IMG/VR virus record: IMGVR_UViG_3300008448_000001
Coordinates: 1 to 64,000 of that record
DNA: 64,000 bases
Reading direction: 5' to 3' (one strand)
Below are positions 3,856-44,145 of this stretch, piece by piece. The first letter of the stretch is position 1, and each line of letters opens with the position of its first letter. The position numbers and the translations under genes are program-made. Under the pieces are notes generated by a model that saw only the letters and a program-made list of their open reading frames with translations, ran no database searches and had not been told where the DNA came from.

Positions 3856-4248
3856 CTAGCGTTGGCTGCTGGCGTGGTTCATTTTGCAATCGACAAACTC
3901 CGGCTGTTGGACCAGGTTTGTAATTTCGTTTTTAACGGCGACCCGGTTTCGGTTGTGGTTCCGAATAGCGACAGCGCGTTTGCCGATTTCGGCTAGGCCT
4001 AGCTCCAGGTCTAGCCCTTTTCGCAAGTCGTACTCGAGATCCCACATTTTCCCGTTGATTTCCTTCAGGCGGGAAACAAGATCCAGAAGCTGCGCATTGT
4101 CTTTGTCGACGCCTTCTCGCAAGTAGTTAATTTGTTTCGAAAGGAGCTCTTTGTCTACTTCGGTTTCGGACAGGCGTTCCATCTTCAGTTCTGCGATCGT
4201 TAGTCTGTCGCAGAGTTCGTTTATTGGCATTGGGATAGGTTTGATCAT
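3856..4248 (-). CDS. DUF6165/DUF4254-like helical protein
   Basis: PINELCDRLTIAELK ... LKEINGKMWDLEYDLRK ... NRNRVAVKNEI pattern; start at 4248 or 4230. Confidence 0.7.
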   Translation of the reverse strand: MIKPIPMPINELCDRLTIAELKMERLSETEVDKELLSKQINYLREGVDKDNAQLLDLVSRLKEINGKMWDLEYDLRKGLDLELGLAEIGKRAVAIRNHNRNRVAVKNEITNLVQQPEFVDCKMNHASSQR

Positions 4249-5356
4249 GTTTAGAAAAATTTTAGCTGTTAGCGATTTGCATTTGTCGGACACCATTTGG
4301 AAACACCGGCCTATCCATGGAGACAGCTACCACAGCTGGAGCTACATTGTGCAGTACGCTGTGCTGGCAGGCGTTGACGCTGTAATTCTAGCGGGCGACA
4401 TCTTGGACAAGCAACTAAATGTTGCAAATCCTGTTGCAAAGCTGAATGCGGGGCTTCTAAAGCTGCGAGACGCCGGAGTGACCGTGCTTTACAATCAGGG
4501 TCAACACGAGTTTCAACGCGACTTACCGTGGATGGACGTGGCCAACTTGGGTGCGAAACATTTAAAAGGCAAGTCGGACTTTTGCTTTTCGAACGGTCTT
4601 CGGATAGCTGGATTCGACTACTGCAACGAGAAAACTCTTGCGGAAAGGCTGGGTGAAATCGAAAAGGATTCTGGACAAGAGTATTTTCTTGTCTGTCACC
4701 AGGTCTGGAAAGATTTCATGGGTGACGTTGGAAAGACACAAGGTTGCTTTGATGATCTACCCAAAAACGTCAGATTTATGTTAACTGGTGATTTCCACCA
4801 AACGATTGTTCGCGAGGTTAGCAAAGATTTGACGGTTTTAAGCCCCGGAAGCACGCATTTGCGCAGCTTGGCGGAGCCGGCGGAAAAGCATTTCTTCGAG
4901 ATAAGTGCTGACCAGAAGGGCTTGTCGATTGAAGTCCGCGACATACCGACTCGGAGATACCTGGAAGTCAAAACAGGTACTTTGCCGTACTTACAGATTT
5001 CTGAGCGGGTTAAAACGTTTGTCGGACAAGATTTCGGAGATCTCCCGGAGGAGCTGCGGAAACCGATTGTTCGAATCGTCCACGGCAAGGATGATTTTGA
5101 TTTTGTGCGGCACATCAAAGAGAGTTTTGACGGCCTTGCTCACTTGTTTTTCAAGCTGAAGACGGTTTCTGTTGACGTTTTAAGTGTGGACACCACGACG
5201 GATGAGAGCCATTTGACGCTTCAAGCTTGTTTGCCGTTTGAGATCAACCCGCAGGGATCGCCTGCGGCCTACGGTTTGGCGTCCGAGCTTTTATCGGGTG
5301 CGGATCCGAACACTGTACTTGAACGTTGGTTAGAGGAGAATTTGAATGCAAATTGA
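4247..5356 (+). CDS. Mre11/SbcD-like metallophosphoesterase nuclease
   Basis: DLH, GDILD, GQHE, CHQ, GDFH motifs; directly upstream of the Rad50-like gene. Confidence 0.9.
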   Translation: MFRKILAVSDLHLSDTIWKHRPIHGDSYHSWSYIVQYAVLAGVDAVILAGDILDKQLNVANPVAKLNAGLLKLRDAGVTVLYNQGQHEFQRDLPWMDVANLGAKHLKGKSDFCFSNGLRIAGFDYCNEKTLAERLGEIEKDSGQEYFLVCHQVWKDFMGDVGKTQGCFDDLPKNVRFMLTGDFHQTIVREVSKDLTVLSPGSTHLRSLAEPAEKHFFEISADQKGLSIEVRDIPTRRYLEVKTGTLPYLQISERVKTFVGQDFGDLPEELRKPIVRIVHGKDDFDFVRHIKESFDGLAHLFFKLKTVSVDVLSVDTTTDESHLTLQACLPFEINPQGSPAAYGLASELLSGADPNTVLERWLEENLNAN

Positions 5357-7487
5357 GACAGTTGAGCTAAAGAACATCGGTCCCCACAGGGAGTTAACCG
5401 CGGAGTTGTCCTCTGGTATCGTCGGCATAGTCGGCGCCAACGGGGCGGGTAAGAGTTCGTTCGTGAACGCTATCTACGCCGCCTTTACGGGTGATTTCAC
5501 ACGCTTCAACGTGGCAACAAAGGCCGAGGCCATTAACAATCAGGCAGCTAAGCACGAAAAGTCTTGGATTAAGATTGTTGGAAACCATGGTTGTAAGCCG
5601 TTTGAGCTGGTTCGAAGCCTGCGTCCGAACGAGGTGACCTTCACATACGGCGACAGTGAGATCGAGACGGCTTCGCAGGTCAATGGCGCAGTTTTCAAGC
5701 TGCTGGGCCTGACGCCAAGCGTTTTTGATCGTTATGTGTTTGTCGAGCAGTGGGAAATGTTCAGCTTTCTTGATGACACGGAAAGCGTGCGGGCTAAAGC
5801 GTTTCAGCACTTGTGTGGAGTCGAGTCGGCCACTTCGCTGCACAAGGCTTGCGTGCAATTCCGGGACAGGCTCACGGCGAAGCAGTCAATTGACAACAGC
5901 CTGGACCTAGAAAGCAACATTGATCAAATTCAGAGGGAAATGCTGCGACTTAAGCGTACGAAGTTCGAAGGCTTGCTGCCCGACGACGAGGCAGCTGAAT
6001 TGCGACAGAAGCGGGATCTTTATCTGAAGGTTTCGCAGCTCGAGTCGCTTAAGTCGCAGGGTCTTATTGACCTCGAAGCATTGAAAAATGTTCTAGGCGA
6101 CAAAGAAAAAGTTTTCCAGGACGTGGAAACAAAGTTTAACAGAGCTGCCGATTGGCTGAAAAAGCACAAGACTTTGCTTGAAGCTGCGGTAGGGACTTTA
6201 CGCGACTGGCAGGCACAAAGCTCTCTTCAATCCAAGCAGGTAAGATGCCGTTCACTTATTAGAGACTGGGAGGCTAAGGTTGAAGCGACCGACGCAGAAA
6301 TAGCTTTGCACGCTGCAAAGTCTCCGAGTTTTTCGAAAGAGGAACTTGCGGGCTTAAAAGCGGAACTTCAAAGTTTAAGAACAAAAGCGAAGGAGTTAAA
6401 AACCGCCGTTAGTAACTTGGAGCAAGGCAGTCGGGCTGTGTGTTCTTCGTGCATGCAGAACATTCCTGCGTCGCATTCGGTGAAATTAAAAGCTGAAGCG
6501 GACGCTGTCGAAAGGCTGGCGGTGGAGAAAGCAAGACAGGTCATGGCCTCGCAGAACTATTGCGATCGGTCGGAATATCTGCTTGAGTTACGAAGAGAGC
6601 AGCAAGGTCTTTTGGTGAAATACCAATCGGAGCTGCAGGGACTGTCGCAGGCTTCGCAGTCGATTGTAACGCAAGACGCGGCAGACAGGGCAACGGCAGC
6701 CCTCGAGCAGCGTAAAAAGGCGGAAGCATCGTTTGCGGAGAGCAAACCGAAGCGAGACAGGTTGAAAGCAGAATTGGACGTGCTGAGAGGCCGCATATCG
6801 AACGCTGAAAGCCAGCTGCAAGAGTACGAGGCTCAGCTTGCAACTTTGACAACGGATCTCGGGTCGGCTGACGCATCGATACAGGAGAAGCTCGAACGGC
6901 ACGACGAGGCTTTACGCCAAAAGGCTGCGGTTTCCGCCGAGTACAAGACTAACGCAACGCAGTTGAGTACTTTGCAGGCGACGTTGAACAAGCTGAAAAC
7001 CTCGCTTGCCCGAGAAGCCAAGACCAGGTCGTTGGCCGAAGTAGTGGACAGGGTCGCTAACGCTTTTCATTGGTCTGGACTACCTAAGCGGGTAGCGCAG
7101 AACAATTTGATGCAGTTGGAAGCGGACATCAATACGCAGCTCGAGCTCTTCAGTTCTCCTTTTTTGGTTGAAACAACTGACGACCTGTCTTTCAAGGCGA
7201 CTTTCCCTGGCAAGCCCAGCGTGTCGGCAAGGCAGCTCAGTGGTGGTCAGAAAGTTATCCTGGCCATTGCTTTTCGGGCGGCTTTGGATAGGCTTTTCGG
7301 GCATAATATTGGGATGTTGTTCCTGGACGAACCTACGGCGGGATTGGACGCAGACAACGTCGCTTACTTCCATGACGCGATGCAGAGCTGGTCTGCAAAC
7401 GTTGGGGCGCAGAAGCAGATTATTGTCATCACGCACGTCCAAGACATGACAAGTGCCTTCGACCAAATTGTAACGATCGATAAATGA
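5346..7487 (+). CDS. Rad50/SbcC-like SMC ATPase
   Basis: Walker A GANGAGKS, long coiled coil with CSSC zinc hook, LSGGQ signature, LFLDEP, ITH. Confidence 0.95.
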   Translation: MQIETVELKNIGPHRELTAELSSGIVGIVGANGAGKSSFVNAIYAAFTGDFTRFNVATKAEAINNQAAKHEKSWIKIVGNHGCKPFELVRSLRPNEVTFTYGDSEIETASQVNGAVFKLLGLTPSVFDRYVFVEQWEMFSFLDDTESVRAKAFQHLCGVESATSLHKACVQFRDRLTAKQSIDNSLDLESNIDQIQREMLRLKRTKFEGLLPDDEAAELRQKRDLYLKVSQLESLKSQGLIDLEALKNVLGDKEKVFQDVETKFNRAADWLKKHKTLLEAAVGTLRDWQAQSSLQSKQVRCRSLIRDWEAKVEATDAEIALHAAKSPSFSKEELAGLKAELQSLRTKAKELKTAVSNLEQGSRAVCSSCMQNIPASHSVKLKAEADAVERLAVEKARQVMASQNYCDRSEYLLELRREQQGLLVKYQSELQGLSQASQSIVTQDAADRATAALEQRKKAEASFAESKPKRDRLKAELDVLRGRISNAESQLQEYEAQLATLTTDLGSADASIQEKLERHDEALRQKAAVSAEYKTNATQLSTLQATLNKLKTSLAREAKTRSLAEVVDRVANAFHWSGLPKRVAQNNLMQLEADINTQLELFSSPFLVETTDDLSFKATFPGKPSVSARQLSGGQKVILAIAFRAALDRLFGHNIGMLFLDEPTAGLDADNVAYFHDAMQSWSANVGAQKQIIVITHVQDMTSAFDQIVTIDK

Positions 7488-8308
7488 CAGATAGACAAAC
7501 CGTTTGTTTGCACGCAGACTCCAACGGCGACGTTTGGAGTCTGCAGGCTGGAAAAGGCATAGTTAGGCCTAAGTTTGACGTTTTACCTGCGTCGGACTTC
7601 TGGGTTGTTGGTTTCCCTTCCAATTATGCCATTCTGACGGAGTTGTACTTTGACACCGTAAGACGTTACAGCGCAAACGAAAAGAATTTGTCCAGCATAT
7701 ATGTCGGCTCGGTTTTTCCTTGGCGTCATTTTGACTGCAAGTCTAAGGATTTCCTGTACGATGTTGTTGCAGTTCCGCCTGCCAAGCGGCAAGCTTCGCA
7801 TTGGCACCTGCTGGACGATGCGTCCATCAGCACGTACTTACTTGCTAAAAGTTTATACGACGCATCTTACGACATGGCGGAGGTGGCCTGGCAAAACCAT
7901 TGTCTGGCCCCTGTTTTTTCGCGACTCGGCTGCGATGCGGACTTAGATCCTGCGATGTTTCTGGTTGCTGACATCTTGGATCCCCGTTGGTTCATGTCAG
8001 CAAACGGAAGTTTCAAGGCTTTGGAGCGGTACTTTGGACTTCAAAAGAGGTCGCACAGACTAGCGGACGCGAAATTTTTCATGCTGTCGGACGCCGTGAA
8101 AGCGATACCGAGCAATAGTTTTTTGCACGCGGAGGCCGAAGTCAGGAATCCGAGAGACAAGCTTTTCGCGATGCCTAGATTGTTTTTGCATTTTTTTGTA
8201 CGACATTGGCTTTCGTTTCAAACGCGGCTTTCGTTTTTTGATCCGTCTTTGTTCTTCAAAAGCCAGAAAGCAAAGCAAATGTACATAGATATTTTCGATC
8301 CGCAGTGA
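7484..8308 (+). CDS. hypothetical protein with IS110/Nop-domain-like C-terminal region
   Basis: AMFLVADILDPRWF...ALERYFGL and RLFLHFFVRHW resemble the conserved blocks of IS110/Nop RNA-binding domains; the ORF is well supported, the fold is tentative. Confidence 0.5.
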   Translation: MTDRQTVCLHADSNGDVWSLQAGKGIVRPKFDVLPASDFWVVGFPSNYAILTELYFDTVRRYSANEKNLSSIYVGSVFPWRHFDCKSKDFLYDVVAVPPAKRQASHWHLLDDASISTYLLAKSLYDASYDMAEVAWQNHCLAPVFSRLGCDADLDPAMFLVADILDPRWFMSANGSFKALERYFGLQKRSHRLADAKFFMLSDAVKAIPSNSFLHAEAEVRNPRDKLFAMPRLFLHFFVRHWLSFQTRLSFFDPSLFFKSQKAKQMYIDIFDPQ

Positions 8309-8787
8309 CAGAGTTTATCGCACGCTTACAGTTTGTCTCGCCTTGCCTGGGTAACGCCAAAGAACCCGGGTCGGGAAGGTTTTTGTTTAGTCGAAACCGC
8401 GAAGGCAAGATAGTTTTCTTGCCTGCTTGGCACAAATCGAACATGGTGATGGCAGCCAATTTGATATCAGGCTATCGCGAAGAAGTGCAACGTATTCTGT
8501 GGAGCACGGTGGTCGATGTAGAGCTGCGTGACAAACGATGGCATCGAGTTTACTATATGAGTGCTGCAGGCAGGGAGCGTTACTCTGTTCACGAGTCAAT
8601 CGCTGCGGGACAGTTGGCAGAAATAAGCCTTTCGCTTCCTGAGAACTTGCCGGTCGATGCTTTTTCGCGTTTGCTGGGGATTGCAGGTAAGCACAAAGGC
8701 TTATCGCCATGGCAACCCGGCACGTATGGGCACTACAGGGTTGTTGACGTGTTTGCGAAACCGACTCTGTTTACGGATAGTGAATAA
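8305..8787 (+). CDS. minimal Cas7-like RAMP protein (phage stand-alone type)
   Basis: N-terminal strand LQFVSPCLG, FSRNREG, HESIAAG and C-terminal G-rich loop GKHKGLSPWQPGTYGHYRV. Confidence 0.7.
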   Translation: MTEFIARLQFVSPCLGNAKEPGSGRFLFSRNREGKIVFLPAWHKSNMVMAANLISGYREEVQRILWSTVVDVELRDKRWHRVYYMSAAGRERYSVHESIAAGQLAEISLSLPENLPVDAFSRLLGIAGKHKGLSPWQPGTYGHYRVVDVFAKPTLFTDSE

Positions 8788-8819
8788 AAAAACCACCCGA
8801 GTTGTGACCCTCGGGTGGT
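8786..8819 (-). terminator. 10-bp hairpin with an A-run on the + strand side (intrinsic terminator in - orientation, or a structural RNA element)
   Basis: ACCACCCGAG 8792-8801 / CTCGGGTGGT 8810-8819, A-run 8786-8792. Confidence 0.5.
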
Positions 8820-8880
8820 AATTGGCTTAGCTGTCGTCGTTGCAGCTGATGCCATTTTAGCTGAAACCCTTTTACTTACA

Positions 8881-10428
8881 ATGGGACGCAGTATGGGTAA
8901 AGAAGTTGTTTTGATAAAAAACGGGAACATTTTGCTTGTTGATCCGGGCGTTGCAGACCAGAAAATAGTGGATATTCTGGGGCCCAAGCTTAGTTTCGAA
9001 TCGTTCCGCAAACTGGTCGGGCGTGAACTGTACGACGCAAAAAGAAACGGTTTAAAGACCTTCGCTATTGATCGGCATATCCTTTTCGAGCTGGACTTCA
9101 AGGGCCGGGTTGCCACGCCGTTTGGGTTTTGGAAAACCATATCTGAAACGCTGAGGGCCGCTGGCTATTCTGTAAGCTACAAGGACAACACGCCGACTGT
9201 CGTGAATCAACAACATAAAGCCGCGAAAAACCGAGCTTTACGTTTTGAGATGTTCATGGATAACATTGCAAGCTATCAGTTGCGAGATCATCAACCGGAG
9301 TTCCTGGATGCCATCATCAGAAACAGCTGTGGACGAATAGACTGCGCACCGGGTTTCGGTAAATCTTTCATGATTGGAATTGTGGCCTCTGTATTCCCTC
9401 GTGCGAGGATCGACGTTGTTTCCAAGCGTGTAGCGGTTCTGCGGGACAGAATTTACCCGGAGCTCACTTCGATGGTGGGTGACGTGGGTATCGTTGGCGG
9501 AGGAAAGAGCATCAAGGATCGCCGAGTTATGTGCTACACGGCTAACTCGTTGAAGCACAGCAAGGCGGACGCAGACATACTGATCGGGGACGAGTGTCAC
9601 GAACTCGCGGCGGATAAGGCGTCAGAGGAGCTCGTTCGCTATCAGGACAGTCGAAATTACGGGCTGTCGGCCAGCCACGACGTTCGTTACGACAACAAGG
9701 ACATGCGTTTGGAGGGCATATTCGGGCCGATCATCTACCGTGTTCCGTACCAGACAGCCCAAGGCTCCGGCCTGGTTGTTCCGATCGAGATAAGATGGAC
9801 AAACGTTAGACTGGACTACAATCCGTGTGCAGGGGTGGACACGGACGATTCTGTAAGGCGTAAACGCATCGGAATATGGACCAACGAATTGCGTAACTTG
9901 GCTATTGCAAACGACGCGAAAGCTTACGACAAGGACACGCAGGTTCTAATCACGGTCGACACAATTACTCACGCTTTTCATCTCAAGAAGCTGCTGCCGG
10001 AATTTACGCTGGTGTACGCGGACGAGGGACTGACGCCCGAGGAGTTGCAGAATTACAAGCGGCAGAAGTTTTGCTCTGCAACGGAGCCGCTGATGGACTT
10101 CACAAGAAAGAAGATGCTGACGCAAAAGTTTGAAAAGGGAGAGCTCAAGAAAGTGATCGCGACAACGGTGTGGAATGTCGGTGTTTCGTTCAACAATTTG
10201 ACTGTGCTTATCCGAGGTAATGGCGGTAGCAGTGCGATCGACAGCACGCAGATTCCTGGTCGCGTAAGTCGTATTGCGGACGGTAAAACTTTCGGTATTA
10301 TCCACGACTACCTCGACGGTTGGGACAAAGGCTTTGATCGTCAAACTAAAGGCCGTCTCAAGGTTTATCGCCAGCACGGTTGGGCGCAGAAATTCCCTGA
10401 CTCGCACCTTGAAAGGCTTTATTCTTAA
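8881..10428 (+). CDS. superfamily 2 DNA helicase (UvsW-like)
   Basis: CAPGFGKS Walker A, DECH, SAS motif III, QIPGRVSR motif VI; start at 8881 or 8893. Confidence 0.9.
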   Translation: MGRSMGKEVVLIKNGNILLVDPGVADQKIVDILGPKLSFESFRKLVGRELYDAKRNGLKTFAIDRHILFELDFKGRVATPFGFWKTISETLRAAGYSVSYKDNTPTVVNQQHKAAKNRALRFEMFMDNIASYQLRDHQPEFLDAIIRNSCGRIDCAPGFGKSFMIGIVASVFPRARIDVVSKRVAVLRDRIYPELTSMVGDVGIVGGGKSIKDRRVMCYTANSLKHSKADADILIGDECHELAADKASEELVRYQDSRNYGLSASHDVRYDNKDMRLEGIFGPIIYRVPYQTAQGSGLVVPIEIRWTNVRLDYNPCAGVDTDDSVRRKRIGIWTNELRNLAIANDAKAYDKDTQVLITVDTITHAFHLKKLLPEFTLVYADEGLTPEELQNYKRQKFCSATEPLMDFTRKKMLTQKFEKGELKKVIATTVWNVGVSFNNLTVLIRGNGGSSAIDSTQIPGRVSRIADGKTFGIIHDYLDGWDKGFDRQTKGRLKVYRQHGWAQKFPDSHLERLYS

Positions 10429-11222
10429 TGTTTTCGAAACCACCAAAACCTTCAAGTAGCTCCAAGCCTGTTCGCAATGAAGGTCTTTCGACCGACAGTC
10501 TTTCAGGTCATGTTTCGCTGTTCAAGCGGACGTATGTCTTAGAGCGTCGAGTTTTGGACATGTGTCGATCAGAGGGAGATTCCCCGGTATACAAGCCTGC
10601 GGCCAGTCTTGACGGCGGTAAACGATACAACACGCCGGAAGAGAAGTCGAAGCAGAACAGCTGGGAAGCAGCTTATCGCGCAGTTGCCTCCATCTGCAAA
10701 CCTGACACGCCGATCGAGTACGTTCGCATACTGTTCAACTCGCTACGGTACAGCTCGTTGCCGACTCCCAACGTGTTGCAGCTGGCTTCGGCGGCTAACG
10801 CGCAAATTGTGCGAGACTATGCAAAAGACGCGTTTAAGCGACTTCAGTCGAGTTTTATAACGGATTCGGCTAGAGCTAAAACGGAAATACTTTTGCGGCT
10901 CGGAGGGAAGGCCGGGACTAGGCAGGCTACGTTTACGGCGATATATTGCACCCTGCTGGATGCACGTTTGGGTTTATCTCCGCTTTACCGTTATTGTTTA
11001 GCGACGGATGCACTTCAAAAAGCACAGAACGAGCGTGAAGCTGGTGTGAACATGGATTTTGGAATTTCGCGTATGCAAACTTACGTGAAAGACTTGGAAT
11101 TCTTGGCAGCTTTCGACTACACCGTTTTTCCGGAAATTTACAGTTCGGTTTACGGAAGTAGTTTGCCGTCTGGTTTTAAAAAATTGGCTTTGTCTTTGGT
11201 GGATTCCGCCAGGGACGCGTAA
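10428..11222 (+). CDS. hypothetical protein in replication module
   Basis: TAATG coupling; 264 aa ORF. Confidence 0.75.
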   Translation: MFSKPPKPSSSSKPVRNEGLSTDSLSGHVSLFKRTYVLERRVLDMCRSEGDSPVYKPAASLDGGKRYNTPEEKSKQNSWEAAYRAVASICKPDTPIEYVRILFNSLRYSSLPTPNVLQLASAANAQIVRDYAKDAFKRLQSSFITDSARAKTEILLRLGGKAGTRQATFTAIYCTLLDARLGLSPLYRYCLATDALQKAQNEREAGVNMDFGISRMQTYVKDLEFLAAFDYTVFPEIYSSVYGSSLPSGFKKLALSLVDSARDA

Positions 11223-11233: not shown

Positions 11234-12928
11234 ATGAGTGGGCAGCAAAAAGTGCTGTCAGAAGCTCATTTGAAACTCTTTTTGGCTGTCTTGTTTCGCA
11301 ATGAGCAAGTGTTCGAGAGTTTCAAAGCAAGCCTGACAGCGAGTCATTTTGACTTTGCAGGGTATCAACTGCTCTACAAAGTTGTTTGGGATTACTTCAA
11401 CGAAAATCAATGTCTTCCGGATTTGTCGCAGATCAACGCGGACATTGCCAGTTACGTCGAAAAAGAATACTTTTCTCTCGACGATGACGAGTACGACGCG
11501 TTAGACGATTTTCTGTACTACGCTTTTGACCCTGGCCTGTTTAAGGAGCCGGACGGTCCGAAAAGCATCAAGGCAGAAAATTTCGCTTTTAACTTCGCGA
11601 CTAAGTTTTTGCTGGAGCAGCAGAAACGAGCCGCTATTTCTCAGCTGAGTGACCTCAGCGATGTAGGCCAGTTGCCGGCCATCTTTCAACAGGCTACAGC
11701 ACAAACTGAGTCGTTGATGGGTTTGTCGGTTTCCGGGGGCAGAAACCTGACGCTTCCGGTTGGCTGGGATAAACGGGCTGGTGTTTACCTGGAGTCTTGC
11801 GGTGTCAGTTTTCTGGATACCTTTCTTGAGGGTGGAACTGCCCCGGGCGAGGCCTACGGCGTGCTGGCACCGTTCGGATCCTACAAAACTACCTTGGCTG
11901 TAATGCTTTGGTACGCTGCCGCTAAGCAAGCGTGTAGTAAGTACTTGAGCGGGGAGTCGAACGGTAAAAAGGGCTTGGCAGTTCTCGTGTCTTATGAAGC
12001 GCCGTTGCAGGACGAGTTGCGGGACCGACTGCTGATGTATTCAGCACAGATATCTCGAACGCGGCTTCAAGCCATGGGCACGAACGGCGTTTCTATATTT
12101 GGAGTCGACCCGGAGACTCCGCAAGACTACGAAAAGATTTTGTTCAAGGAGCAGATAGCAAACGGTGTTTTTGAACCGGAGATGCAACGGTATGAGCGAG
12201 TTTTGCCGGTCGTGAACGAGCACACAGTTTGTCTTGATTTCACGGGCAGGCACGAGAAGTTTAAGACGGCTGGTAATCGTGGCGTATCGGAAATCGTTTC
12301 CGCGATAAAAGCGGAATTAAAGCGTTGCGGACCGGACTACTACATCGCGACCGTCATAGTCGACTATGTTGGGCTTATGGTGCAAAGAGATGCAACGGTG
12401 GACCCGAAGGAAAAACAACGCGAAGACAGGCTTTACCAGCTCGCAGGATTACAGCTTGTCAATCGCGTTGCTATGCCTTTTAACACACCTGTTTGGGCTT
12501 TTCACCAGCTTTCCGGCGAGGCAAATGCGATATTGAATCCTGCGAAAAGAATGGATCACACGCAAGCTAAAGGCTCTAGAAGTTTTGCCGAAAATCTGGC
12601 TTTCTGTTTTGTGGGTGGTCGTTTGAATGACGATTACATGGGTCAACTTTGTTGCTCCAAGCATCGGCGAGCCGGTCAGCACAATCCTGTGCTGTTAAAG
12701 GTTGACGGCTTGTTTAACACCGTCACGGCACCAGAAGGTTATACCGTGGACAGGCTTGGTAAGATCGTCAGGAAAGACAGCCTAGGTTCTTCGACTGTTT
12801 TGTCTCCGGATATGTTTAGTTCGGTTCCGGGCCTGTCGGAAACAGTAGAAGATCCTTTTGCCGATTACACAGAAGACAGCAGCATGGATTACGCTTCGGA
12901 GCAGGTTTCGAATTTAAGCGAAGAATAA
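11234..12928 (+). CDS. DnaB/gp41-like replicative helicase
   Basis: APFGSYKTT Walker A variant, VSYE, IVDYVGLM Walker B, HQLS, KHR; upstream of primase. Confidence 0.8.
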   Translation: MSGQQKVLSEAHLKLFLAVLFRNEQVFESFKASLTASHFDFAGYQLLYKVVWDYFNENQCLPDLSQINADIASYVEKEYFSLDDDEYDALDDFLYYAFDPGLFKEPDGPKSIKAENFAFNFATKFLLEQQKRAAISQLSDLSDVGQLPAIFQQATAQTESLMGLSVSGGRNLTLPVGWDKRAGVYLESCGVSFLDTFLEGGTAPGEAYGVLAPFGSYKTTLAVMLWYAAAKQACSKYLSGESNGKKGLAVLVSYEAPLQDELRDRLLMYSAQISRTRLQAMGTNGVSIFGVDPETPQDYEKILFKEQIANGVFEPEMQRYERVLPVVNEHTVCLDFTGRHEKFKTAGNRGVSEIVSAIKAELKRCGPDYYIATVIVDYVGLMVQRDATVDPKEKQREDRLYQLAGLQLVNRVAMPFNTPVWAFHQLSGEANAILNPAKRMDHTQAKGSRSFAENLAFCFVGGRLNDDYMGQLCCSKHRRAGQHNPVLLKVDGLFNTVTAPEGYTVDRLGKIVRKDSLGSSTVLSPDMFSSVPGLSETVEDPFADYTEDSSMDYASEQVSNLSEE

Positions 12929-12949: not shown

Positions 12950-14050
12950 GTGGCAGACAAAAAACCCTTAAATATGTTGCTTTACAATCGTATTAAAGCG
13001 ACCTTTAAGAATGTCAGGATAAGTCATCAAAACGAGAAGCAAGAAAGGAACCGTCGAATTGATTTTGTTACCAATCGTGAAACGATCGACATAAAAAACT
13101 GGGGTGAGTCTTACTCTGTCTGCTGCCCGTTTTGCAACGATACTCGCTTTCGGTGTGTGATAAACCACCGGTATGGTACGCTGGACGAACACAACCGGAT
13201 TCAATCTAGGCTTGTGGTTTGCTTTAACGCCGGTTGTCCGCTGGCCTTGAAAACCCAAGACTGCTACGACCGACTTGAGCAGATGCTGACCGGAAGAAAA
13301 CTTTTTGACCTAGCTAAAGCGGAAATCGCAGTCGGTAGCGAGGTAGACATTGACGACTTCAGAATGAACTGGCCAGGTGAAGTTGTTCGCATAGATAAAC
13401 TTCCAGAAGACCATCCGGCTGTTTTGTGGCTTTCCGGAAACCGCGGTTTCAACGTGAAGAAACTCGGCACGTATTACAATGTTCACTGGTGCGTTAAAAG
13501 CAGACATGCTTTATGTCGCGACAGAATTGTCATACCGATTTACATGAACAAGAAGATGGTCGGTTTCCAAACCAGACCGCCTTACGACACAAACTGGAAG
13601 CTTGCGAGTGTTCCCAAGTACTACACCGCCAAGGGCACACCTAAGCGGCAGGTCATCTACAATCTTGGGAACATGATAAAGTGTGAAACCGGAATTGTTG
13701 TAGAGGGTGTTACGAGCGTTTGGCGGGGCGGTGATCCGTTCGGTGCTGTACTCGGTGCTGCTGTGACGCCGGCTCAATACGATTTACTCGTGAAGCACTT
13801 CAAAGACCATGCCGTTGTTTTGCTTTTCGACCCGGATCTGTTGCTAGAAAGCGAGAAGCGGAAAGTTTTGGACAGCTTGGTGGCAATCGAAAAACGCTTG
13901 AACGCGGATTTGAAAGGTGGTTGCTGCTTGGTTTGGTTGCCGGAGGGCACTGATCCGGCGGAATTCGAGGGGAATTTCTTGCGTAATTACATCGTCAATG
14001 CGGCGGCAGAGAAGGGTGTGACGGTCTCTTGGAGGAAGCGAAATGGCTAG
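12950..14050 (+). CDS. DNA primase (Zn-binding plus TOPRIM)
   Basis: CPFC..C.N.GC zinc domain, RIVIPI, FQTR, PKY, VEG, FDPD, LPEGTDP. Confidence 0.85.
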   Translation: MADKKPLNMLLYNRIKATFKNVRISHQNEKQERNRRIDFVTNRETIDIKNWGESYSVCCPFCNDTRFRCVINHRYGTLDEHNRIQSRLVVCFNAGCPLALKTQDCYDRLEQMLTGRKLFDLAKAEIAVGSEVDIDDFRMNWPGEVVRIDKLPEDHPAVLWLSGNRGFNVKKLGTYYNVHWCVKSRHALCRDRIVIPIYMNKKMVGFQTRPPYDTNWKLASVPKYYTAKGTPKRQVIYNLGNMIKCETGIVVEGVTSVWRGGDPFGAVLGAAVTPAQYDLLVKHFKDHAVVLLFDPDLLLESEKRKVLDSLVAIEKRLNADLKGGCCLVWLPEGTDPAEFEGNFLRNYIVNAAAEKGVTVSWRKRNG

Positions 14051-17000
14051 AAAGATAGAGAAGCTCGGCGGTGCCATCAGCGCTTCTGGTAAAGCAACTG
14101 TTGCCGAACAAAGACTTAAGCTGTCGCAGCTGGATAAAATACTTACAGGGTCTGAGATTTACAACTTGGACGCACCAGGTCTGCCTACGCTCTACGGCGG
14201 AAGTGCTTTTATTCAGTATGCTCAGGCGAAGGGCGACAGCAGTGATTCCTTCATGTATGACCTGATAAGGGCAGCTCTTCGGGACAAAGCGTTCGTTTTG
14301 CCAGTTGAAACGGCAGCGCATCAAACGAAAGACGCTCAGTTTTTGCCAGGGCATGTGTGGGGTTCAACTGTGGACGGGCCTAGGCGGGCCAAGATTATGA
14401 TCGTCAACAAAAACCCTTGGGTTTCAGCGATGAAAAACGGTCGTTGTTTTGGCGACGAGGATGGAAAAATCCTCATGGACATTTTTGCAGGCTGCAAGAT
14501 GACAGGTGTCGGAAACATTTACGTTACGCACCTTGTAAAGTTTATGCCGCCCAACGGTAAAACGACTTTCAGGGCTCAGTGGGTGAAGGACGGTGCTTAT
14601 CTTCTGGCACACGAGATCAAAATCGTGCAACCGGATTATATCTTGTGTCTAGGCACTGACGCCAGTAAGGCTTTGCTGGGCGACGGGCACGGTGTTAACG
14701 ACATGCTGGGTAAAGTCGTCAAGCACCGTTACAACGTTGCCTCGAACGAGAAAGACTTGGACTCGAGTTGGCGTGAGGCGAGCGTGATGACTGTCGTGCA
14801 TCCGCGTCAAACGGCAAGAGACCAGTCGGCTATCCGCGCGTTGGAAACGGGCTTAGCCGCCTTTGTAAACTTGACGCAGGGCAAGAACGTTAGCTTTGAC
14901 ACGGAAGTGGACCACAATGTGGTTTCTTCGTTTGATGAATTGATTTACTATTTTTCAGAAATCGACAAAGACTACGACCCTATTGAGGAGGTGATTGCGG
15001 TCGACGCGGAGTGGAACGGACAGCATCCGGTCAACAATGGTTCGTACATGCGGACAATTCAGCTTGCTTGGAAACCGGGAAAGGTAATCGGTATCATTCT
15101 GCATCTTGCAGGGGGTGCCGTTAATTCGGACATTGACGTCAAAAACAATCCCGAAGTTAAATCGTTGTTCAACGCTTTTTTCAAGGGAGGAAACGTCACC
15201 GTCACGCGAGAGGACGGGTCAGAAGCAGTTCTTCGGTTCAAACGCAAGCGTGTAATCGGGCACTTCTTCAACGCGGATTTGGAGTGGCTTGTTGCCTATG
15301 GTATAGACATTCAAGAGTGCTTCTCGTGCAAGCTCTATGACTTGGAAATACCTCCGGCAGATTCCGTACCGAAGGGCGCAAAGAGGCTTTTGAGCTTTTA
15401 CCTTGAAGACGGGTTTAAGCCCGGAGAAACCGTTCCGGCTTGGTACCGGACAAAGTACGAGGGCGGGGCTGACACGGGCCTTATGTGCCACGCGATAGAA
15501 GAGACGGCCAACTACAAGCTTGAGCTGCTTGCGGCCAGGTATCTTAACGCGCACAGATATGACGTGGATTTGCAAGAGTGGAAGACCAGCTACTGCAAAC
15601 AAAAGGGTCTGTCGTCGGAGTCGCTCGAAGGATATGGCGAATGCCCAGACAACGTCTTGCTGCCTTACGGCATGTGGGATGCGGATGTCACGCTTCGACT
15701 TTACTATAAGTTCAATCCTTTGCTCGATAGCGACTACGACGGTAACTGCTGCAGAGAAGCTTTTTGGGAAGCACAAATCGCCACGCCGGCTGTGTTGGAC
15801 ATTCACCGCAGCGGCATGACGCTCGACAGATCACGTGTTGATTTTCTGACGGTGCAGTTCCTTGACGGTCGAACCGCACTGGAGAGTAAAATACGCGAAA
15901 GTTTGAATTGGCCGGACTTCAACATTCGGTCTTTAACGCAGGTGCGAGAGGTCCTTTTCGGGCATTTGCTCAACGGCAAGCGAGACCCTGAGACAGGCGG
16001 TCCCGTTCGTGTGCGGCCAGCCGACGCGATCTCGTTGAACCTTATGCCGCTGTACGATACCAGCAAACCGCCGAAACAGTGGGAAGAGCTTCGACAAAAA
16101 AATGTTGAAAGCCAGCACAGCCCTTGTACCAGCAAGCAGGTTTTGTCAATTCTGGTGCAGACGGTGCCAGACGCAAAAACAAGAGAAATACTTGGGATGC
16201 TTCGGGATCACCGCTTTCTTGACCAAGCGTTGAAAACGGTTTTAAGGCCACCAAATACCGATCCTTGTACACAGGAAACTTGTTATGACGCTGACGGAAA
16301 CATGGAGTACGACAAGGGCCTAGCTTCCGTTTGTTGCTCAGACGGTAAAATCAGGACGCACATATACCAGACGAAGGAGACTGGTAGGTGGTCGAGCGCT
16401 AGACCCAACCTGACGAACATATCGAAGAAGCGTGACAAGGATTTCAAACGCATTCTAGGTAGCAGGTACAAGTATAAACTGCGAAGTATTTTAAAGGCCT
16501 CTCCGGGACACGTTTTCGTTGAAGCTGACTACGTCGGAGCAGAGCTTTTCGGTATGGCTGTTATGTCGGGAGACACAGCCATGATCGAGCACGCAAGGCG
16601 TAACCAGTTGGAGGACACGCACCCCAATTACTATGACATTCACTCGAATGTGGCAGTTAACGCCTTCAAGCTGAAATGCCCTCCAACCAAAAAAGGTCTG
16701 GAGCAGATCAAAAAGGATCACCTCCGCAACGTGGCGAAGTCCGTTATTTTCGGGATTGCTTACGGGCGAGGTGCCAAGGCTATTTCAGTGGGTGCGAAGG
16801 AGGAAGGTATCGATATTTCGGTGGACGAAGCAAGAGCGGTTATCAAGACCATTTTCGCAACGTACCCGAAGCTCGTACCGTTCTTCGAGGGTTGCAAGGA
16901 GCGTGCACGCGGTTACTACTTGGATAGTAATCATCAACCTGTGTCCGTACCGCGATACCTGTGCAACTGCTTTGGGCGATTTAGGCGTTTTCCGGACAGC

Positions 17001-17564
17001 TTTGGCGCTAGCGATTTGGAATCCGAGTTTGAACGGCAAGCTATGAATTTCCCGATTCAAAGCATGATTGCTTCGGTGGCAAGCAGGGCTGTTGGTTACC
17101 TGATTGACTACAGGAACAAGCAGATCAGCCTCGGGCACCACATGTTCAATTTGCTTCTGCAGATCCATGACGCATTGATCTTGGAGGTTCCGTACCGCTA
17201 CGTTAAACACGTGTGCGAGTATGTCATTCCTACGTACATGCGAAAAGCCGTCCCTATTTTCCCGACGCACATTAGCGGTATGCTCGAGGGTGAGCCCACA
17301 GGTGCGGGTCCCTTCTACCTTGGTATTGAGGGGGAGGTGACTACAAACTGGGGCGAGCGTATATTTGACGCGGACGCCAAAAGGCTTGGTCTGCCCGTAG
17401 GTCGTGGCGTTGTAGACGGATGCGTCGTGCACTATAGTCAGACGCCAAAAGCAGGCGAAGAGAGATCCGTTGTGGACGTCTCGAAACCTCGCGTCAAGCG
17501 AGACATAACACCTCCGGATCCGTATGTACCTGGTAAGTTCAAGTCATCAAAACGTAGGCGATAA
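14043..17564 (+). CDS. family A DNA polymerase with N-terminal uracil-DNA-glycosylase-like domain and 3'-5' exonuclease
   Basis: UDG-like block (YVTHLVK, EIKIVQPDYILCLG, HP); Exo I/II/III (VDAE, NADL, YGMWD); TGRWSS; motif A DYVGAEL; motif B RNVAKSVIFGIAYG; motif C QIHD. Confidence 0.95.
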   Translation: MARKIEKLGGAISASGKATVAEQRLKLSQLDKILTGSEIYNLDAPGLPTLYGGSAFIQYAQAKGDSSDSFMYDLIRAALRDKAFVLPVETAAHQTKDAQFLPGHVWGSTVDGPRRAKIMIVNKNPWVSAMKNGRCFGDEDGKILMDIFAGCKMTGVGNIYVTHLVKFMPPNGKTTFRAQWVKDGAYLLAHEIKIVQPDYILCLGTDASKALLGDGHGVNDMLGKVVKHRYNVASNEKDLDSSWREASVMTVVHPRQTARDQSAIRALETGLAAFVNLTQGKNVSFDTEVDHNVVSSFDELIYYFSEIDKDYDPIEEVIAVDAEWNGQHPVNNGSYMRTIQLAWKPGKVIGIILHLAGGAVNSDIDVKNNPEVKSLFNAFFKGGNVTVTREDGSEAVLRFKRKRVIGHFFNADLEWLVAYGIDIQECFSCKLYDLEIPPADSVPKGAKRLLSFYLEDGFKPGETVPAWYRTKYEGGADTGLMCHAIEETANYKLELLAARYLNAHRYDVDLQEWKTSYCKQKGLSSESLEGYGECPDNVLLPYGMWDADVTLRLYYKFNPLLDSDYDGNCCREAFWEAQIATPAVLDIHRSGMTLDRSRVDFLTVQFLDGRTALESKIRESLNWPDFNIRSLTQVREVLFGHLLNGKRDPETGGPVRVRPADAISLNLMPLYDTSKPPKQWEELRQKNVESQHSPCTSKQVLSILVQTVPDAKTREILGMLRDHRFLDQALKTVLRPPNTDPCTQETCYDADGNMEYDKGLASVCCSDGKIRTHIYQTKETGRWSSARPNLTNISKKRDKDFKRILGSRYKYKLRSILKASPGHVFVEADYVGAELFGMAVMSGDTAMIEHARRNQLEDTHPNYYDIHSNVAVNAFKLKCPPTKKGLEQIKKDHLRNVAKSVIFGIAYGRGAKAISVGAKEEGIDISVDEARAVIKTIFATYPKLVPFFEGCKERARGYYLDSNHQPVSVPRYLCNCFGRFRRFPDSFGASDLESEFERQAMNFPIQSMIASVASRAVGYLIDYRNKQISLGHHMFNLLLQIHDALILEVPYRYVKHVCEYVIPTYMRKAVPIFPTHISGMLEGEPTGAGPFYLGIEGEVTTNWGERIFDADAKRLGLPVGRGVVDGCVVHYSQTPKAGEERSVVDVSKPRVKRDITPPDPYVPGKFKSSKRRR

Positions 17565-42550: not shown

Positions 42551-43303
42551 GTGGCTGATAAATATTCTGGAACGATTCGCATTGGCGGTAGCGTCACCGA
42601 GGAGGAACTTGAAAAAATTCAAGGTTTGTTTGAACAGTGCTTAGATTTCTTGTCGGATGGTGAGTTGCGTGAGAACGGAACGGGTGATTTTGTCGAATGC
42701 GAAGAAAACGCCTTCAAGAAAGTAATTGCTTTTTGCAACCGACAAAATATCGCGCTGTCTTTAGTCTGGCACAAAAAGCGAGGGGCAGACAGCGTCGTGG
42801 AGTACTGGTTAGCCGGTAGCCACAAGGAGTATCTTGCTAACTGCGACGGCGATGTTGTGGTCAAGCTTTCCGATCTGGAATCGCACACTGATACTTCGGT
42901 TGCAGATTTCATCGAAGAGCTTGAGGTTCCTGTTTTCCCGCCGTTCGAACTTGTCAAAACCGACAAAAGCGAGCCGCAAGGCTTCGATACTGCGCATCTT
43001 AGTGGTGACGCACTTGTGGCGGCTAAGGCGGTGTTGAAGGCTCTTGGGCCCAATCCGTGCGGCAGCGGAGTTAGAGCTTTTTGGACGCCGGACGAATGGA
43101 TTGCTCGCAACGAGAAATTTGGCACGGACTCCATTCTTATTTTGTGCCACGACGGAGGCGACCTCGCCGTAATGTGTAATTGGGACTACGGTCAGTACGA
43201 ACTTTTTCAAAAGCTTGAGAAAAGGCTCAAAAAACACGGATACTACTGCGTGCAGCAAACTAGCTGGTACTCCGCGGTGTACCGTATACCGACAAGCAGC
43301 TAA
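42551..43303 (+). CDS. hypothetical two-domain protein
   Basis: long ORF; start GTG 42551 uncertain. Confidence 0.65.
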   Translation: MADKYSGTIRIGGSVTEEELEKIQGLFEQCLDFLSDGELRENGTGDFVECEENAFKKVIAFCNRQNIALSLVWHKKRGADSVVEYWLAGSHKEYLANCDGDVVVKLSDLESHTDTSVADFIEELEVPVFPPFELVKTDKSEPQGFDTAHLSGDALVAAKAVLKALGPNPCGSGVRAFWTPDEWIARNEKFGTDSILILCHDGGDLAVMCNWDYGQYELFQKLEKRLKKHGYYCVQQTSWYSAVYRIPTSS

Positions 43304-43313
43304 CACGGTTTTG

Positions 43314-43363
43314 GGGCTTGAACACGAGGGCACCGGTTCGCCGGTGCCCGACTGTTCGAGTCT
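43314..43363 (+). other. 50-nt intergenic stem-loop (9-bp upper stem, UUCG loop, 3x3 internal loop, 11-bp lower stem)
   Basis: GGGCACCGG-TTCG-CCGGTGCCC flanked by GGGCTTGAACA / TGTTCGAGTCT. Confidence 0.75.
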
Positions 43364-43411
43364 GATTGGCAGAACTTGATGTTTTCTTTAGCGTAACAGG
43401 AGATTTGCAGC

Positions 43412-43642
43412 ATGTCGGAAGACGTGAACGAGAAATTGAAAAGACTGTTGGCGGCGGTGGACGTGCTTTTGCTGAACGCTGTGGATTTAGACGAGTGTTT
43501 TGTTGACGACGACAACGACGACGAGGACGACGACTACCCGGAAGACGAAGACGGGATACGTTGGTATCACGACTGGTTCGAGCTTAAAGAAGCTCGGGAT
43601 CAGTTTAAAGACAACACTGGAGTTCAAACACAAAGGGGTTAA
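43412..43642 (+). CDS. acidic hypothetical protein
   Basis: AGGAG RBS. Confidence 0.6.
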   Translation: MSEDVNEKLKRLLAAVDVLLLNAVDLDECFVDDDNDDEDDDYPEDEDGIRWYHDWFELKEARDQFKDNTGVQTQRG

Positions 43643-43643
43643 A

Positions 43644-43712
43644 ATGTGCGCTTGCGCTCAACCAAACATTAACGGGCATTATGGCTATCGTTGGCAACCT
43701 AAAGACGAGTAA
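43644..43712 (+). pseudogene. probable truncated gene (22 aa) ending inside the cassette repeat
   Basis: AAAGGGG then ATG; MCACAQPNINGHYGYRWQPKDE, stop TAA supplied by the repeat. Confidence 0.4.
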
Positions 43713-44105: not shown

Positions 44106-44145
44106 CTGATACCAACAATAAGGGCATCACTCGTTGGAGATTTTT

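What the first reader, a model, noticed from the sequence alone, without database searches (positions are those of the whole stretch)
8305..8787. Stand-alone 160-aa Cas7-like RAMP with no visible array
Seen: beta1 LQFVSPCLG, FSRNREGKIVFLPAWHK (the equivalent of the RAMP 'G.P.IP.S..KG' block), a thumb-like RVYYMSAAGRERYSVHESIAAG, and a C-terminal LGIAGKHKGLSPWQPGTYGHYRV G-rich loop. This fits my recollection of minimal phage RAMPs, including the Vipr type reported with short GGY-NN-patterned RNAs, but the protein is very small and its G-loop is degenerate (GLSPW). No GGY-NN tract was visible in the intergenic regions I read. Inference: it uses a different RNA, binds ssDNA as a filament, or sequesters host crRNA as an anti-CRISPR.
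Basis: partly seen in the sequence, partly recalled or inferred. Interest (0 to 1): 0.75.

Follow-up and report, generated by a model that had tools for sequence, protein, structure and literature searches.

The report
Vipr-like RAMP in phage replication module
A 160-residue protein of an uncultured 205-kb freshwater phage has the same fold as the backbone subunits of CRISPR effector complexes and is most like the newly described viral Vipr proteins, but it has no guide-RNA repeats and sits as a long-inherited gene inside the phage's DNA replication and recombination block, pointing to a use of this fold outside RNA-guided interference.

Summary
It belongs to a metagenome-only family of about 200 clusters at 50% identity.

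**Sequence link to Vipr.** Profile-profile comparison with SUSP1-type Vipr gives P = 2.8e-8 (controls P >= 0.03).

**It is not a canonical VIPR system.**
- The complete genome and 1.24 Mb of related loci hold no GGY/NN tract above chance. The same scan finds all SUSP1 vrRNAs.
- The guanine-reading residues of Vipr are replaced.
- Most family members have no intergenic space beside the gene.
- Two relatives carry a canonical VIPR cassette as well.

**Context.** The gene always lies directly upstream of an SF2 helicase, in a block SbcD-SbcC-x-RAMP-helicase-DnaB-primase-PolA. It co-diverges with the helicase (r = 0.93) and has been lost several times.

**Best reading (inferred).** A non-programmable binder of single-stranded nucleic acid that works with the helicase and nuclease in recombination-dependent replication.

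The parts
8305..8787 (+). Gene for the 160-aa minimal Cas7/Vipr-like RAMP (the finding)
7484..8308 (+). Upstream 274-aa ORF of unknown function ('up274' family, shared DPRW[FY] motif). Its stop overlaps the RAMP start by 4 nt.
   Evidence: No Pfam, PHROG or Atlas assignment. Detected by tblastn in 34 of 68 loci. A homologous 300-360-aa ORF sits between SbcC and the helicase even in loci that lack the RAMP gene.
8788..8892 (+). Conserved 105-nt spacer. Hairpin 1 lies at 8792-8819 behind an A-run, hairpin 2 at about 8823-8854, and an invariant 22-mer at 8817-8838. It is specific to the target's subclade.
   Evidence: Alignment A4. Three covarying pairs in hairpin 1. The 22-mer is single-copy in the genome. 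The spacer is about 101-108 nt only in the window, L012-L016 and L018-L019; elsewhere it is -8 to +15 nt. It reads as terminator-like only on the minus strand. No Rfam family.
8893..10428 (+). SF2 (ResIII / Helicase_C) DNA helicase, start placed by homology. It is the invariant downstream neighbour of the RAMP gene.
   Evidence: Pfam and PHROG phrog_16. Start conserved as M-G/A-K-E. Adjacent in 67 of 68 loci and in 57 of 57 loci.
4151..5356 (+). SbcD/Mre11-like metallophosphoesterase
   Evidence: Syntenic in 65 of 68 loci.
5346..7487 (+). SbcC/Rad50-like SMC ATPase
   Evidence: phrog_77, E 1e-42. Syntenic in 67 of 68 loci.
10428..11222 (+). 264-aa ORF of unknown function between the helicase and DnaB
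   Evidence: Poorly conserved: detected in 7 of 68 loci.
11234..12928 (+). DnaB-like replicative helicase
   Evidence: phrog_19. Syntenic in 67 of 68 loci.
12950..14050 (+). DNA primase
   Evidence: phrog_47, E 2.4e-33. Syntenic in 67 of 68 loci.
14043..17564 (+). UDG-domain / family A DNA polymerase fusion
   Evidence: Pfam families recorded on homologues. Syntenic in 67 of 68 loci.
20102..21649 (+). Weak UvsX-like recombinase candidate
   Evidence: phrog_97, E 2.5e-9. PF00154 RecA was not detected.

Best explanation
SHOWN.
- The ORF encodes a genuine minimal Cas7-type RAMP. Its nearest structural and sequence relatives are the viral Vipr proteins.
- It belongs to a separate family that is not a VIPR system. 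It has no GGY/NN RNA. Most members have no flanking non-coding space. The guanine-reading residues of Vipr are replaced.
- Canonical Vipr can coexist with it in one genome.
- The family is a vertically inherited resident of the replication-recombination block (Mre11/Rad50-like nuclease, SF2 helicase, DnaB, primase, PolA) of a clade of roughly 185-230-kb uncultured phages. The gene always lies directly upstream of the SF2 helicase and is usually translationally coupled to it. It evolves at the helicase's rate.

INFERRED.
- The protein keeps the nucleic-acid-binding scaffold of RAMPs: a basic core, the N-terminus of helix 1, the thumb hairpin, the G-loop glycines and a stacking aromatic.
- It most likely coats a single strand (ssDNA, or the RNA or displaced strand of an R-loop) as an oligomer, either without sequence preference or with a fixed one.
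- It would work with the adjacent helicase and the nuclease during recombination-dependent replication or repair. That makes it a non-programmable accessory factor rather than an RNA-guided interference device.

Confidence is about 0.9 for the identity and context. It is about 0.35 for the mechanism.
For: Fold:
- the top 50 PDB hits are all Cas7-type RAMPs (E 2e-6 to 1e-4).
- the Atlas model of the nearest viral cluster (probably family, kinship not shown) aligns with PF03787 RAMPs.

Vipr kinship:
- founder Viprs at ranks 1, 2, 4, 5 and 7.
- hhalign 95% probability, P = 2.8e-8.
- three disjoint subfamilies each hit the same Vipr region, and controls give P >= 0.03.
- the top PDB sequence hit is SUSP1 Vipr.

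Not canonical VIPR:
- no pentamer tract in the complete genome. The same scans find 12-, 6-, 5- and 4-unit tracts in SUSP1.
- chance level in 1.24 Mb of related loci, except for two loci that hold a canonical Vipr.
- H17, D177 and R179 are replaced.
- no spacer in most loci.
- a canonical Vipr coexists in L053 and L071, but in only 2 of 141 loci.

Replication context:
- synteny in 67 of 68 loci.
- 57 of 57 directly upstream of the helicase.
- present in all major helicase clades.
- Mantel r = 0.93, 0 of 999 permutations as high; mean distances 0.56 against 0.54.
- basic core, median pI 9.3.
- the module has a nuclease, helicases, a primase, a polymerase and a UvsX-like gene, but no recognisable SSB, mediator or loader.
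Against: - There is no direct evidence of nucleic-acid binding, oligomerisation or helicase contact. The one complex prediction returned 'no answer'.
- The gene was lost at least 8 times on the helicase tree, with nothing in its place. It is therefore not indispensable to the module.
- The nearly invariant H96-E97 pair is not explained by mere binding and could be catalytic.
- The target's subclade has a strongly conserved structured spacer right after the gene. That spacer could be an RNA partner.
- Failure to detect an SSB is weak evidence in so divergent a phage.
- C-terminal tails are not SSB-like.
Confidence: 0.42

Rival explanations
1. It is a non-canonical RNA-guided Vipr. The protein still assembles on a guide RNA, but the guide lacks GGY/NN periodicity. 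It would be encoded elsewhere, taken from a transcript, or (in the target's subclade) derived from the conserved 105-nt spacer. The SF2 helicase would act as its accessory (vap-like) enzyme on the DNA target.
For: - Vipr is the nearest relative.
- The VIPR paper states that types III-V have nuclease or helicase accessory genes, and that some vrRNAs have only NNNGG, YNNNG or NNNNG periodicity.
- The stacking aromatic at the W178 position is kept in 82 of 96 members.
- The spacer is conserved, single-copy and structured, with covariation.
Against: - No periodic tract of any of the four published kinds exceeds chance in the complete genome or in related loci.
- Most family members have no non-coding space next to the gene, so any guide would have to be distal.
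- Vertical inheritance at a fixed site, at the rate of a core enzyme, is unlike the sporadic canonical VIPR cassettes found in only 2 of 141 loci.
- The base-reading residues are lost.
Confidence: 0.2
2. It is an RNA-processing or RNA-cleaving RAMP (Cas6- or Csm3-like). It would use the invariant H96-E97 pair, for example to cut the operon transcript at the hairpin after its own gene, or to remove RNA from primers or R-loops.
For: - H96 (94 of 96) and E97 (95 of 96) are the most conserved polar residues. They sit where Vipr has the R-x-R-P thumb base.
- RAMPs include metal-independent RNases. This rests on established knowledge of Cas6 and Csm3, not on a test here.
- Conserved hairpins follow the gene in several subclades.
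Against: - No alignment places H96-E97 on a known RAMP catalytic site. The N-terminal and thumb parts of the HH alignment are low-confidence.
- Hairpins are absent where the gene abuts the helicase gene.
- Nothing was tested biochemically.
Confidence: 0.12
3. It is an anti-CRISPR or anti-defence decoy. As a Cas7 mimic, it would sequester host crRNA or poison host type I, III or IV effector assembly.
For: It has the Cas7-like fold. It has been lost repeatedly, as expected of conditionally useful genes. It is confined to viruses.
Against: - Its position inside the replication operon is fixed.
- It is translationally coupled to the helicase.
- It co-diverges with the helicase at a core-gene rate across very deep divergence. 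This is unlike anti-defence genes, which sit in variable accessory regions.
- Its nearest kin are Viprs, not host Cas7s.
- It gives no PADLOC hit.
Confidence: 0.07

Closest known systems
[quoted passage not shown]
   Same: - Single-RRM minimal RAMP with thumb and G-loop, phage-encoded, with no cas genes or CRISPR array.
- Nearest neighbours by fold.
- The only significant sequence relative.
- Colinear motifs: beta1 P-x-L, the G-x-V-x-F-x-P block against G-P-Y-I-P-G, and A-G-x-x-x-G ... aromatic ... G-x-F-x-V.
- Basic protein.
   Different: - About 35 residues shorter; it lacks the insertion after beta1.
- Cross-family HMM scores are only 3-18 bits.
- No GGY/NN vrRNA and, in most loci, no flanking intergenic space.
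- The contact residues H17, D177 and R179 are replaced, and R-x-R-P at the thumb base becomes H-E-A-F.
- It is a fixed, vertically inherited replication-module gene, not a sporadic cassette.
- It coexists with canonical Vipr in L053 and L071.
Cas7-family backbone subunits of class 1 CRISPR effectors (Csm3, Cmr4, Cas7-11 domains, type VII Cas7)
   Different: 7-14% identity and no sequence-level hit. No crRNA, no array and no partner Cas proteins. Shorter than Csm3. A catalytic Asp equivalent was not identified.
Accessory single-strand-binding and mediator factors of phage recombination-dependent replication (T4 gp32, UvsY, gp59, UvsW.1). This is a functional analogy only.
   Same: A small protein encoded among an Mre11/Rad50-type nuclease, an SF2 (UvsW-like) helicase, a replicative helicase, a primase, a polymerase and a UvsX-like gene. 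None of these accessory functions is otherwise recognisable in the genome.
   Different: An unrelated fold (RRM/RAMP, not OB or helical). No acidic C-terminal tail. No biochemical evidence. The gene is dispensable in some lineages.

Membership tests
RAMP superfamily (Cas7-like) | Ferredoxin/RRM-like core fold | tested here: met
RAMP superfamily (Cas7-like) | Glycine-rich loop between helix 2 and the last strand | tested here: met
   G128 in 94 of 96, G132 in 96 of 96 and G142 in 96 of 96 members, in the loop 131-143 before strand 144-151. This region aligns to the Vipr G-loop at P = 2.8e-8.
RAMP superfamily (Cas7-like) | Thumb-like beta-hairpin inserted in the core | tested here: inconclusive
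   The hairpin 79-85/91-99 lies between core strands 65-72 and 104-111, inside the region aligned to Csm3. Coordinates were not inspected residue by residue, so equivalence to the Cas7 thumb is inferred.
RAMP superfamily (Cas7-like) | Association with a CRISPR array and cas genes | tested here: not met
   The neighbours are replication genes. No repeat array near the gene was seen in any scan, and there is no Rfam family in the window.
VIPR system (Vipr + vrRNA) | Vipr-type minimal RAMP (fold neighbours and sequence homology) | tested here: met
   The founder Viprs X1U2U4, A0A2D6XG06, A0A1F4YLN4, A0A0F9A1L0 and A0A661D0E2 rank 1, 2, 4, 5 and 7. hhalign gives P = 2.8e-8 with controls P >= 0.03. 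Only 43 columns are confidently aligned, and HMM cross-scores are 3-18 bits.
VIPR system (Vipr + vrRNA) | vrRNA: tandem GGY/NN (YNNGG) pentamers or the related NNNGG, YNNNG or NNNNG tracts | tested here: not met
   In the whole 204,794-bp genome on both strands: 1 hit against 0.65 expected for YNNGG x4, and at most 5 of 9 GG-phased pentamers, equal to the shuffle. The only period-5 G signal comes from pentapeptide-repeat coding sequence. Positive control: SUSP1 gives 9 of 9. Related loci are at chance level, apart from L053 and L071, which hold a canonical Vipr.
VIPR system (Vipr + vrRNA) | Long intergenic regions flanking the vipr gene | tested here: not met
   Upstream there is a 4-nt overlap with the preceding ORF. 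Downstream there are 105 nt in the target's subclade and -8 to +15 nt in most other loci.
VIPR system (Vipr + vrRNA) | Residues that read the GGY motif (SUSP1 H17, R138, D177, W178, R179) | tested here: not met
   In type II Vipr: H17 in 36 of 39, R138 in 39 of 39, D177 in 33 of 39, R179 in 39 of 39. At the aligned positions of the target family: His in 4 of 96, Pro in 91 of 96 in place of D177, and G/R/K/Q in place of R179. Only the aromatic at the W178 position is kept (82 of 96). The R138 region reads H-E (alignment, low confidence outside the G-loop).
VIPR system (Vipr + vrRNA) | Adjacent accessory (vap) gene acting on DNA | tested here: inconclusive
   An SF2 helicase is always adjacent, and the paper lists helicases among vap functions. 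Here, however, the helicase is part of a conserved replication block and persists where the RAMP gene is absent. The complex prediction gave no answer.
VIPR system (Vipr + vrRNA) | Forms a ribonucleoprotein filament that binds dsDNA by a gapped code | not testable with these tools
   This needs purification, RNA co-purification and binding assays. No RNA run was listed as holding the locus.
OB-fold SSB (PF00436), considered for function only | OB fold / SSB profile match | tested here: not met
   No Pfam hit. The fold is RRM/RAMP. The tails are not acidic. Any SSB-like role would be by analogy, not by membership.

The most novel reading that the evidence does not exclude
RAMPs have a role in viral DNA replication that is independent of, and possibly older than, RNA-guided interference. 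In the strongest version, this protein assembles on a transcript or displaced strand to form or stabilise an R-loop (as Vipr does on its targets) at a replication or recombination intermediate. The neighbouring UvsW-like SF2 helicase then remodels that intermediate. That would make a replisome accessory the evolutionary source, or an early offshoot, of the Vipr and CRISPR effector backbone.
Probability: 0.12. Interest if true: 0.9.

Novelty: new variant of a known kind. Interest (0 to 1): 0.72.

Why it matters
- Vipr was proposed in 2026 as the viral ancestor of all CRISPR RAMPs, and every described Vipr works with GGY/NN guide RNAs. This family is a second lineage of viral RAMPs, found only in metagenomes so far.
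- It keeps the RNA-binding scaffold but has no such RNA.
- It has been fixed for a very long time inside a phage replication-recombination operon, next to a helicase.
- If it binds nucleic acid without a programmable guide, the RAMP filament has a housekeeping use in viruses. That gives a concrete candidate for what RAMPs did before, or besides, guided interference.
- If instead it uses an unrecognised guide, it widens the VIPR code.
- Either outcome can be tested directly with a small, confidently modelled protein.

Tried and rejected
**No direct match**
- Direct sequence annotation gave nothing: no Pfam, PHROG, PADLOC or PDB hit for the single protein or the 6-sequence profile. A scan of 96 members against Pfam gave only noise.
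- Pairwise BLASTP against SUSP1 Vipr found nothing. Only profile methods see the link.
- GenBank phages gave no tblastn hit for three family representatives and no near DNA match, so there is no cultured carrier.
- Cellular genomes hold no relative of the target's subfamily. Wider alignments could not be used for that scan.

**Hypotheses rejected**
- An apparent excess of period-5 G on the minus strand turned out to be pentapeptide-repeat coding sequence. It is not vrRNA.
- SSB-like acidic C-terminal tail: tails are variable, 44% negative and 27% positive.
- Replication origin at the conserved spacer: GC skew is uniformly positive across the window with no switch, which gives no support.
- The spacer as a generic promoter or terminator motif: its core 22-mer is single-copy. 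The spacer as a family-wide RNA partner: it is confined to one subclade.
- Non-orthologous displacement: loci without the RAMP gene have nothing in its place.

**Tests that gave no answer**
- RAMP-helicase complex prediction: no answer, not evidence either way.
- Transcript evidence: no RNA run was listed as holding the locus.
- The supplementary tables of the VIPR paper are not held. Whether any of its seven types includes this family could not be checked.
Full report
**1. The observation**

The window is the first 64 kb of a 204,794-bp virus record with direct terminal repeats and estimated 100% completeness. Its start overlaps the stop of a 274-aa upstream ORF by 4 nt and matches the N-termini of all homologues.

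It is a conserved gene. A word-based search found five close homologues at 52-93% identity. An exhaustive profile search of 1.84 billion cluster representatives found 198 clusters at E <= 1e-3 and 138 at E <= 1e-10, almost all 140-200 aa. Sources name them only 'hypothetical protein'. They come almost entirely from JGI/IMG, Logan and ENA metagenomes, with no UniRef entry. Atlas clusters of the family are 97-100% viral.

The phage occurs in many lake and freshwater metagenomes. It has no cultured relative: PolA is at most 25% identical to any GenBank phage, and three family representatives gave no tblastn hit.

**2. The fold**

No sequence library recognises the protein. Two structure predictions were made:
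- With 6 sequences: pLDDT 77.
- With 96 sequences: pLDDT 97 and pTM 0.88. The order of elements is strand 2-10, helices 40-54 and 58-62, strands 65-72, 79-85, 91-99 and 104-111, helix 117-130, strand 144-151.

Structure searches gave the following:
- Foldseek against PDB returned 107 matches at E <= 1e-3. The top 50 are all Cas7-type RAMP subunits: Csm3/Csm5, Cmr4/Cmr1 and type VII Cas7.
- In BFVD the best match is annotated 'Cas system-associated RAMP superfamily protein'.
- The Atlas model of the nearest viral cluster (probably a family member, kinship not shown) aligns with PF03787 RAMPs and with Csm4.

**3. Kinship with Vipr**

The VIPR preprints describe Vipr as a minimal phage RAMP that polymerises on vrRNAs made of 9-16 YNNGG units plus a 3' tail. 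The resulting complex binds dsDNA by a gapped code.

Among 2.3 million AlphaFold DB clusters, the query's top hit is X1U2U4. All five founder Vipr accessions listed in that paper's methods fall at ranks 1, 2, 4, 5 and 7.

I located the SUSP1 locus in KT454805.2. The 195-aa ORF carries the published contact residues H17, E71, M72, R138, C173, D177, W178 and R179 (position 175 reads V against the paper's T175). Its flanks hold YNNGG tracts of 12, 6, 5 and 4 units.

The sequence comparisons gave:
- Pairwise BLASTP against the target sees nothing.
- hhalign of the 96-sequence family alignment against a 39-sequence SUSP1-type alignment gives 95% probability and P = 2.8e-8 over helix 2, the G-loop and the last strand.
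- Reversed, column-shuffled and unrelated profiles give P >= 0.03.
- Three non-overlapping subfamily alignments each hit the same Vipr region, at P = 3.5e-5, 1.7e-5 and 6.4e-8.
- The best hit of the family profile in all PDB sequences is 'SUSP1 Vipr protein', 36pp, at E = 0.018.

With relaxed settings the alignment is colinear over the whole protein. It pairs beta1 (P13, L15, A18) and the G-x-V-x-F-x-P-x-W-W block with Vipr's G-P-Y-I-P-G-x-N-I, and it shows one insertion of about 30 residues in Vipr. That part is low-confidence.

**4. Why it is not a VIPR system**

(a) RNA. The regexes that recover every SUSP1 vrRNA find only chance-level hits in the complete genome: 1 against 0.65 expected for YNNGG x4. 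A degenerate phase scan gives at most 5 of 9 GG-phased pentamers, equal to the shuffle, against 9 of 9 in SUSP1. An excess of period-5 G on the minus strand is the coding sequence of pentapeptide-repeat genes. Across 1.24 Mb of related loci the four published tract types are at shuffle level, apart from two loci.

(b) Those two loci carry a canonical VIPR in addition to the family gene.
- L053 has, in order, tRNA-Gln, an array of nine YNNGG tracts, an HNH-type ORF, and a 234-aa Vipr that scores 164 bits against the Vipr profile.
- L071 has a 194-aa Vipr (33 bits) and a period-5 tract directly upstream of its family gene.
- Family members score only 0-10 bits against the Vipr profile, and Viprs score 6-18 bits against the family profile.
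- Canonical Vipr occurs in 2 of 141 distinct loci and is not detected in the target genome.

(c) Contact residues. In type II Vipr, H17, R138, D177 and R179 are near-invariant. At the aligned family positions His occurs in 4 of 96 members, D177 is Pro in 91 of 96, and R179 is variable. The scaffold glycines (G132 and G142, 96 of 96), F/Y144 and an aromatic at the W178 position (82 of 96) are kept. The thumb base reads H96-E97 (94 and 95 of 96).

(d) Space. The 105-nt spacer after the gene is confined to the target's subclade. In most loci the helicase start lies -8 to +15 nt from the RAMP stop.

**5. Context**

All genes run on the plus strand, in this order:
1. SbcD-like nuclease subunit
2. 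SbcC-like ATPase
3. up274, the 274-aa ORF of unknown function
4. the RAMP gene
5. SF2 helicase
6. a 264-aa ORF
7. DnaB-like helicase
8. primase
9. UDG-PolA fusion

A thymidylate kinase and a weak UvsX-like gene lie further on.

The evidence for a stable place in this block is:
- The order holds in 67 of 68 RAMP-anchored viral loci at 25-40% protein identity, many of them from 185-229-kb contigs.
- In 80 helicase-anchored loci, 57 have the RAMP gene, always immediately upstream of the helicase. The other 23 have SbcC, an up274-family ORF and the helicase, with nothing in its place.
- On a quick maximum-likelihood helicase tree the gene is present in all major clades and on both sides of the midpoint root. 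Absences need at least 8 changes, including one well-supported clade of 10. Several absences sit on long branches and could be missed divergent copies.
- RAMP and helicase pairwise distances correlate (Pearson r = 0.93, Mantel 0 of 999). Their means are almost equal, 0.56 against 0.54.

The gene is thus ancient, vertically inherited and under constraint like a core enzyme. It is also dispensable in some lineages.

**6. Mechanism**

What is shown is a basic (median pI 9.3) minimal RAMP that keeps the nucleic-acid-binding scaffold, has lost the guanine readers, has no periodic RNA, and sits in a fixed place beside an SF2 helicase within a T4-like set of recombination-dependent replication genes. 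That set lacks a recognisable SSB, mediator or loader (these negatives are weak evidence).

What is inferred is that the protein coats a single strand (ssDNA, or the RNA or displaced strand of an R-loop) and cooperates with the helicase and nuclease.

Nothing biochemical was testable here:
- The helicase-RAMP complex prediction returned 'no answer'.
- No RNA run was listed as holding the locus.

The rival explanations are:
- An unrecognised guide RNA with the helicase as a vap-like partner. The conserved, single-copy, covarying spacer of the target's subclade keeps this alive.
- A Cas6/Csm3-like nuclease using H96-E97.
- An anti-CRISPR decoy, disfavoured by the fixed operon position and the core-like evolutionary rate.

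**7. Novelty**

The fold and the Vipr concept are known. A Vipr-related family without vrRNA, fixed in a replication operon, is not mentioned in the VIPR preprint: the word 'replication' does not occur in it. A full-text search for 'Cas7-like', 'phage', 'helicase' and 'RAMP' together found only two general CRISPR reviews.

The preprint's survey used NCBI NR, where this family is almost absent. Its supplementary tables are not held, so I could not exclude that one of its seven types overlaps this family. I rate the finding a new variant of a known kind, of high interest for the origin and functional range of RAMPs.

Noticed in passing
L053:2247-3897 (IMGVR_UViG_3300022752_005685), about 6-8 kb upstream of that phage's RAMP-like gene: A complete canonical VIPR cassette. 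In order: tRNA-Gln (2247-2317), an array of nine YNNGG tracts (2321-2821) whose units end in a conserved GGATTTATTT-like tail, a 120-aa HNH-type ORF (weak Pfam hit, E 0.004), and a 234-aa Vipr (164 bits against the SUSP1-type profile). A tRNA directly abutting the vrRNA array may serve in its processing.
   Followed up: partly
L071:9282-9948 (IMGVR_UViG_3300017991_000051): A divergent 194-aa Vipr (33 bits; G-loop GGALIGLGTYRGVFGKFHV), followed by a single period-5 C-N-N-N-G tract of 12-14 units (9879-9948). Both are inserted immediately upstream of that phage's RAMP-like gene. The two RAMP lineages are therefore adjacent here, which may be chance or may hint at a duplication or insertion hotspot.
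   Followed up: partly
window 8788-8892: A spacer that is better conserved than the flanking proteins across phages at 52-58% protein identity. It holds an A-run, a 10-bp hairpin with three compensatory pair changes and an invariant loop, an invariant single-copy 22-mer, and a second hairpin. It looks terminator-like only on the minus strand, where no genes lie. Its function is unknown; it could be a regulatory site, an attenuator or a small RNA.
   Followed up: partly
G000 (own genome, outside the window) about 168085-168570, 168951-169211 and 197643-197888: Long 15-nt-period coding repeats that encode A-N-L-type pentapeptide repeats on the plus strand. This suggests at least two or three pentapeptide-repeat proteins (DNA-mimic-like) in this phage.
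   Followed up: no
window 7484-8308 and homologues (e.g. L100:4488-5522, L123:4725-5639): The 'up274' family of 270-360-aa ORFs shares a DPRW[FY] motif and, in many members, SLGG[FW]HE. It always lies between SbcC and the RAMP or helicase gene, even where the RAMP gene is absent. It has no Pfam, PHROG or Atlas assignment, and its Atlas model is poor (pLDDT 0.30).
   Followed up: partly
window 14043-17564: A 1173-aa polymerase in which homologues carry a uracil-DNA-glycosylase domain fused to the 3'-5' exonuclease and family A polymerase domains.
   Followed up: no
window 1-64000: All substantial ORFs lie on the plus strand, with uniformly positive GC skew (0.04-0.19 per 2 kb). There are no tRNA genes and no Rfam family at gathering score. 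Larger gaps without long ORFs (e.g. 43303-44949) were not examined.
   Followed up: no
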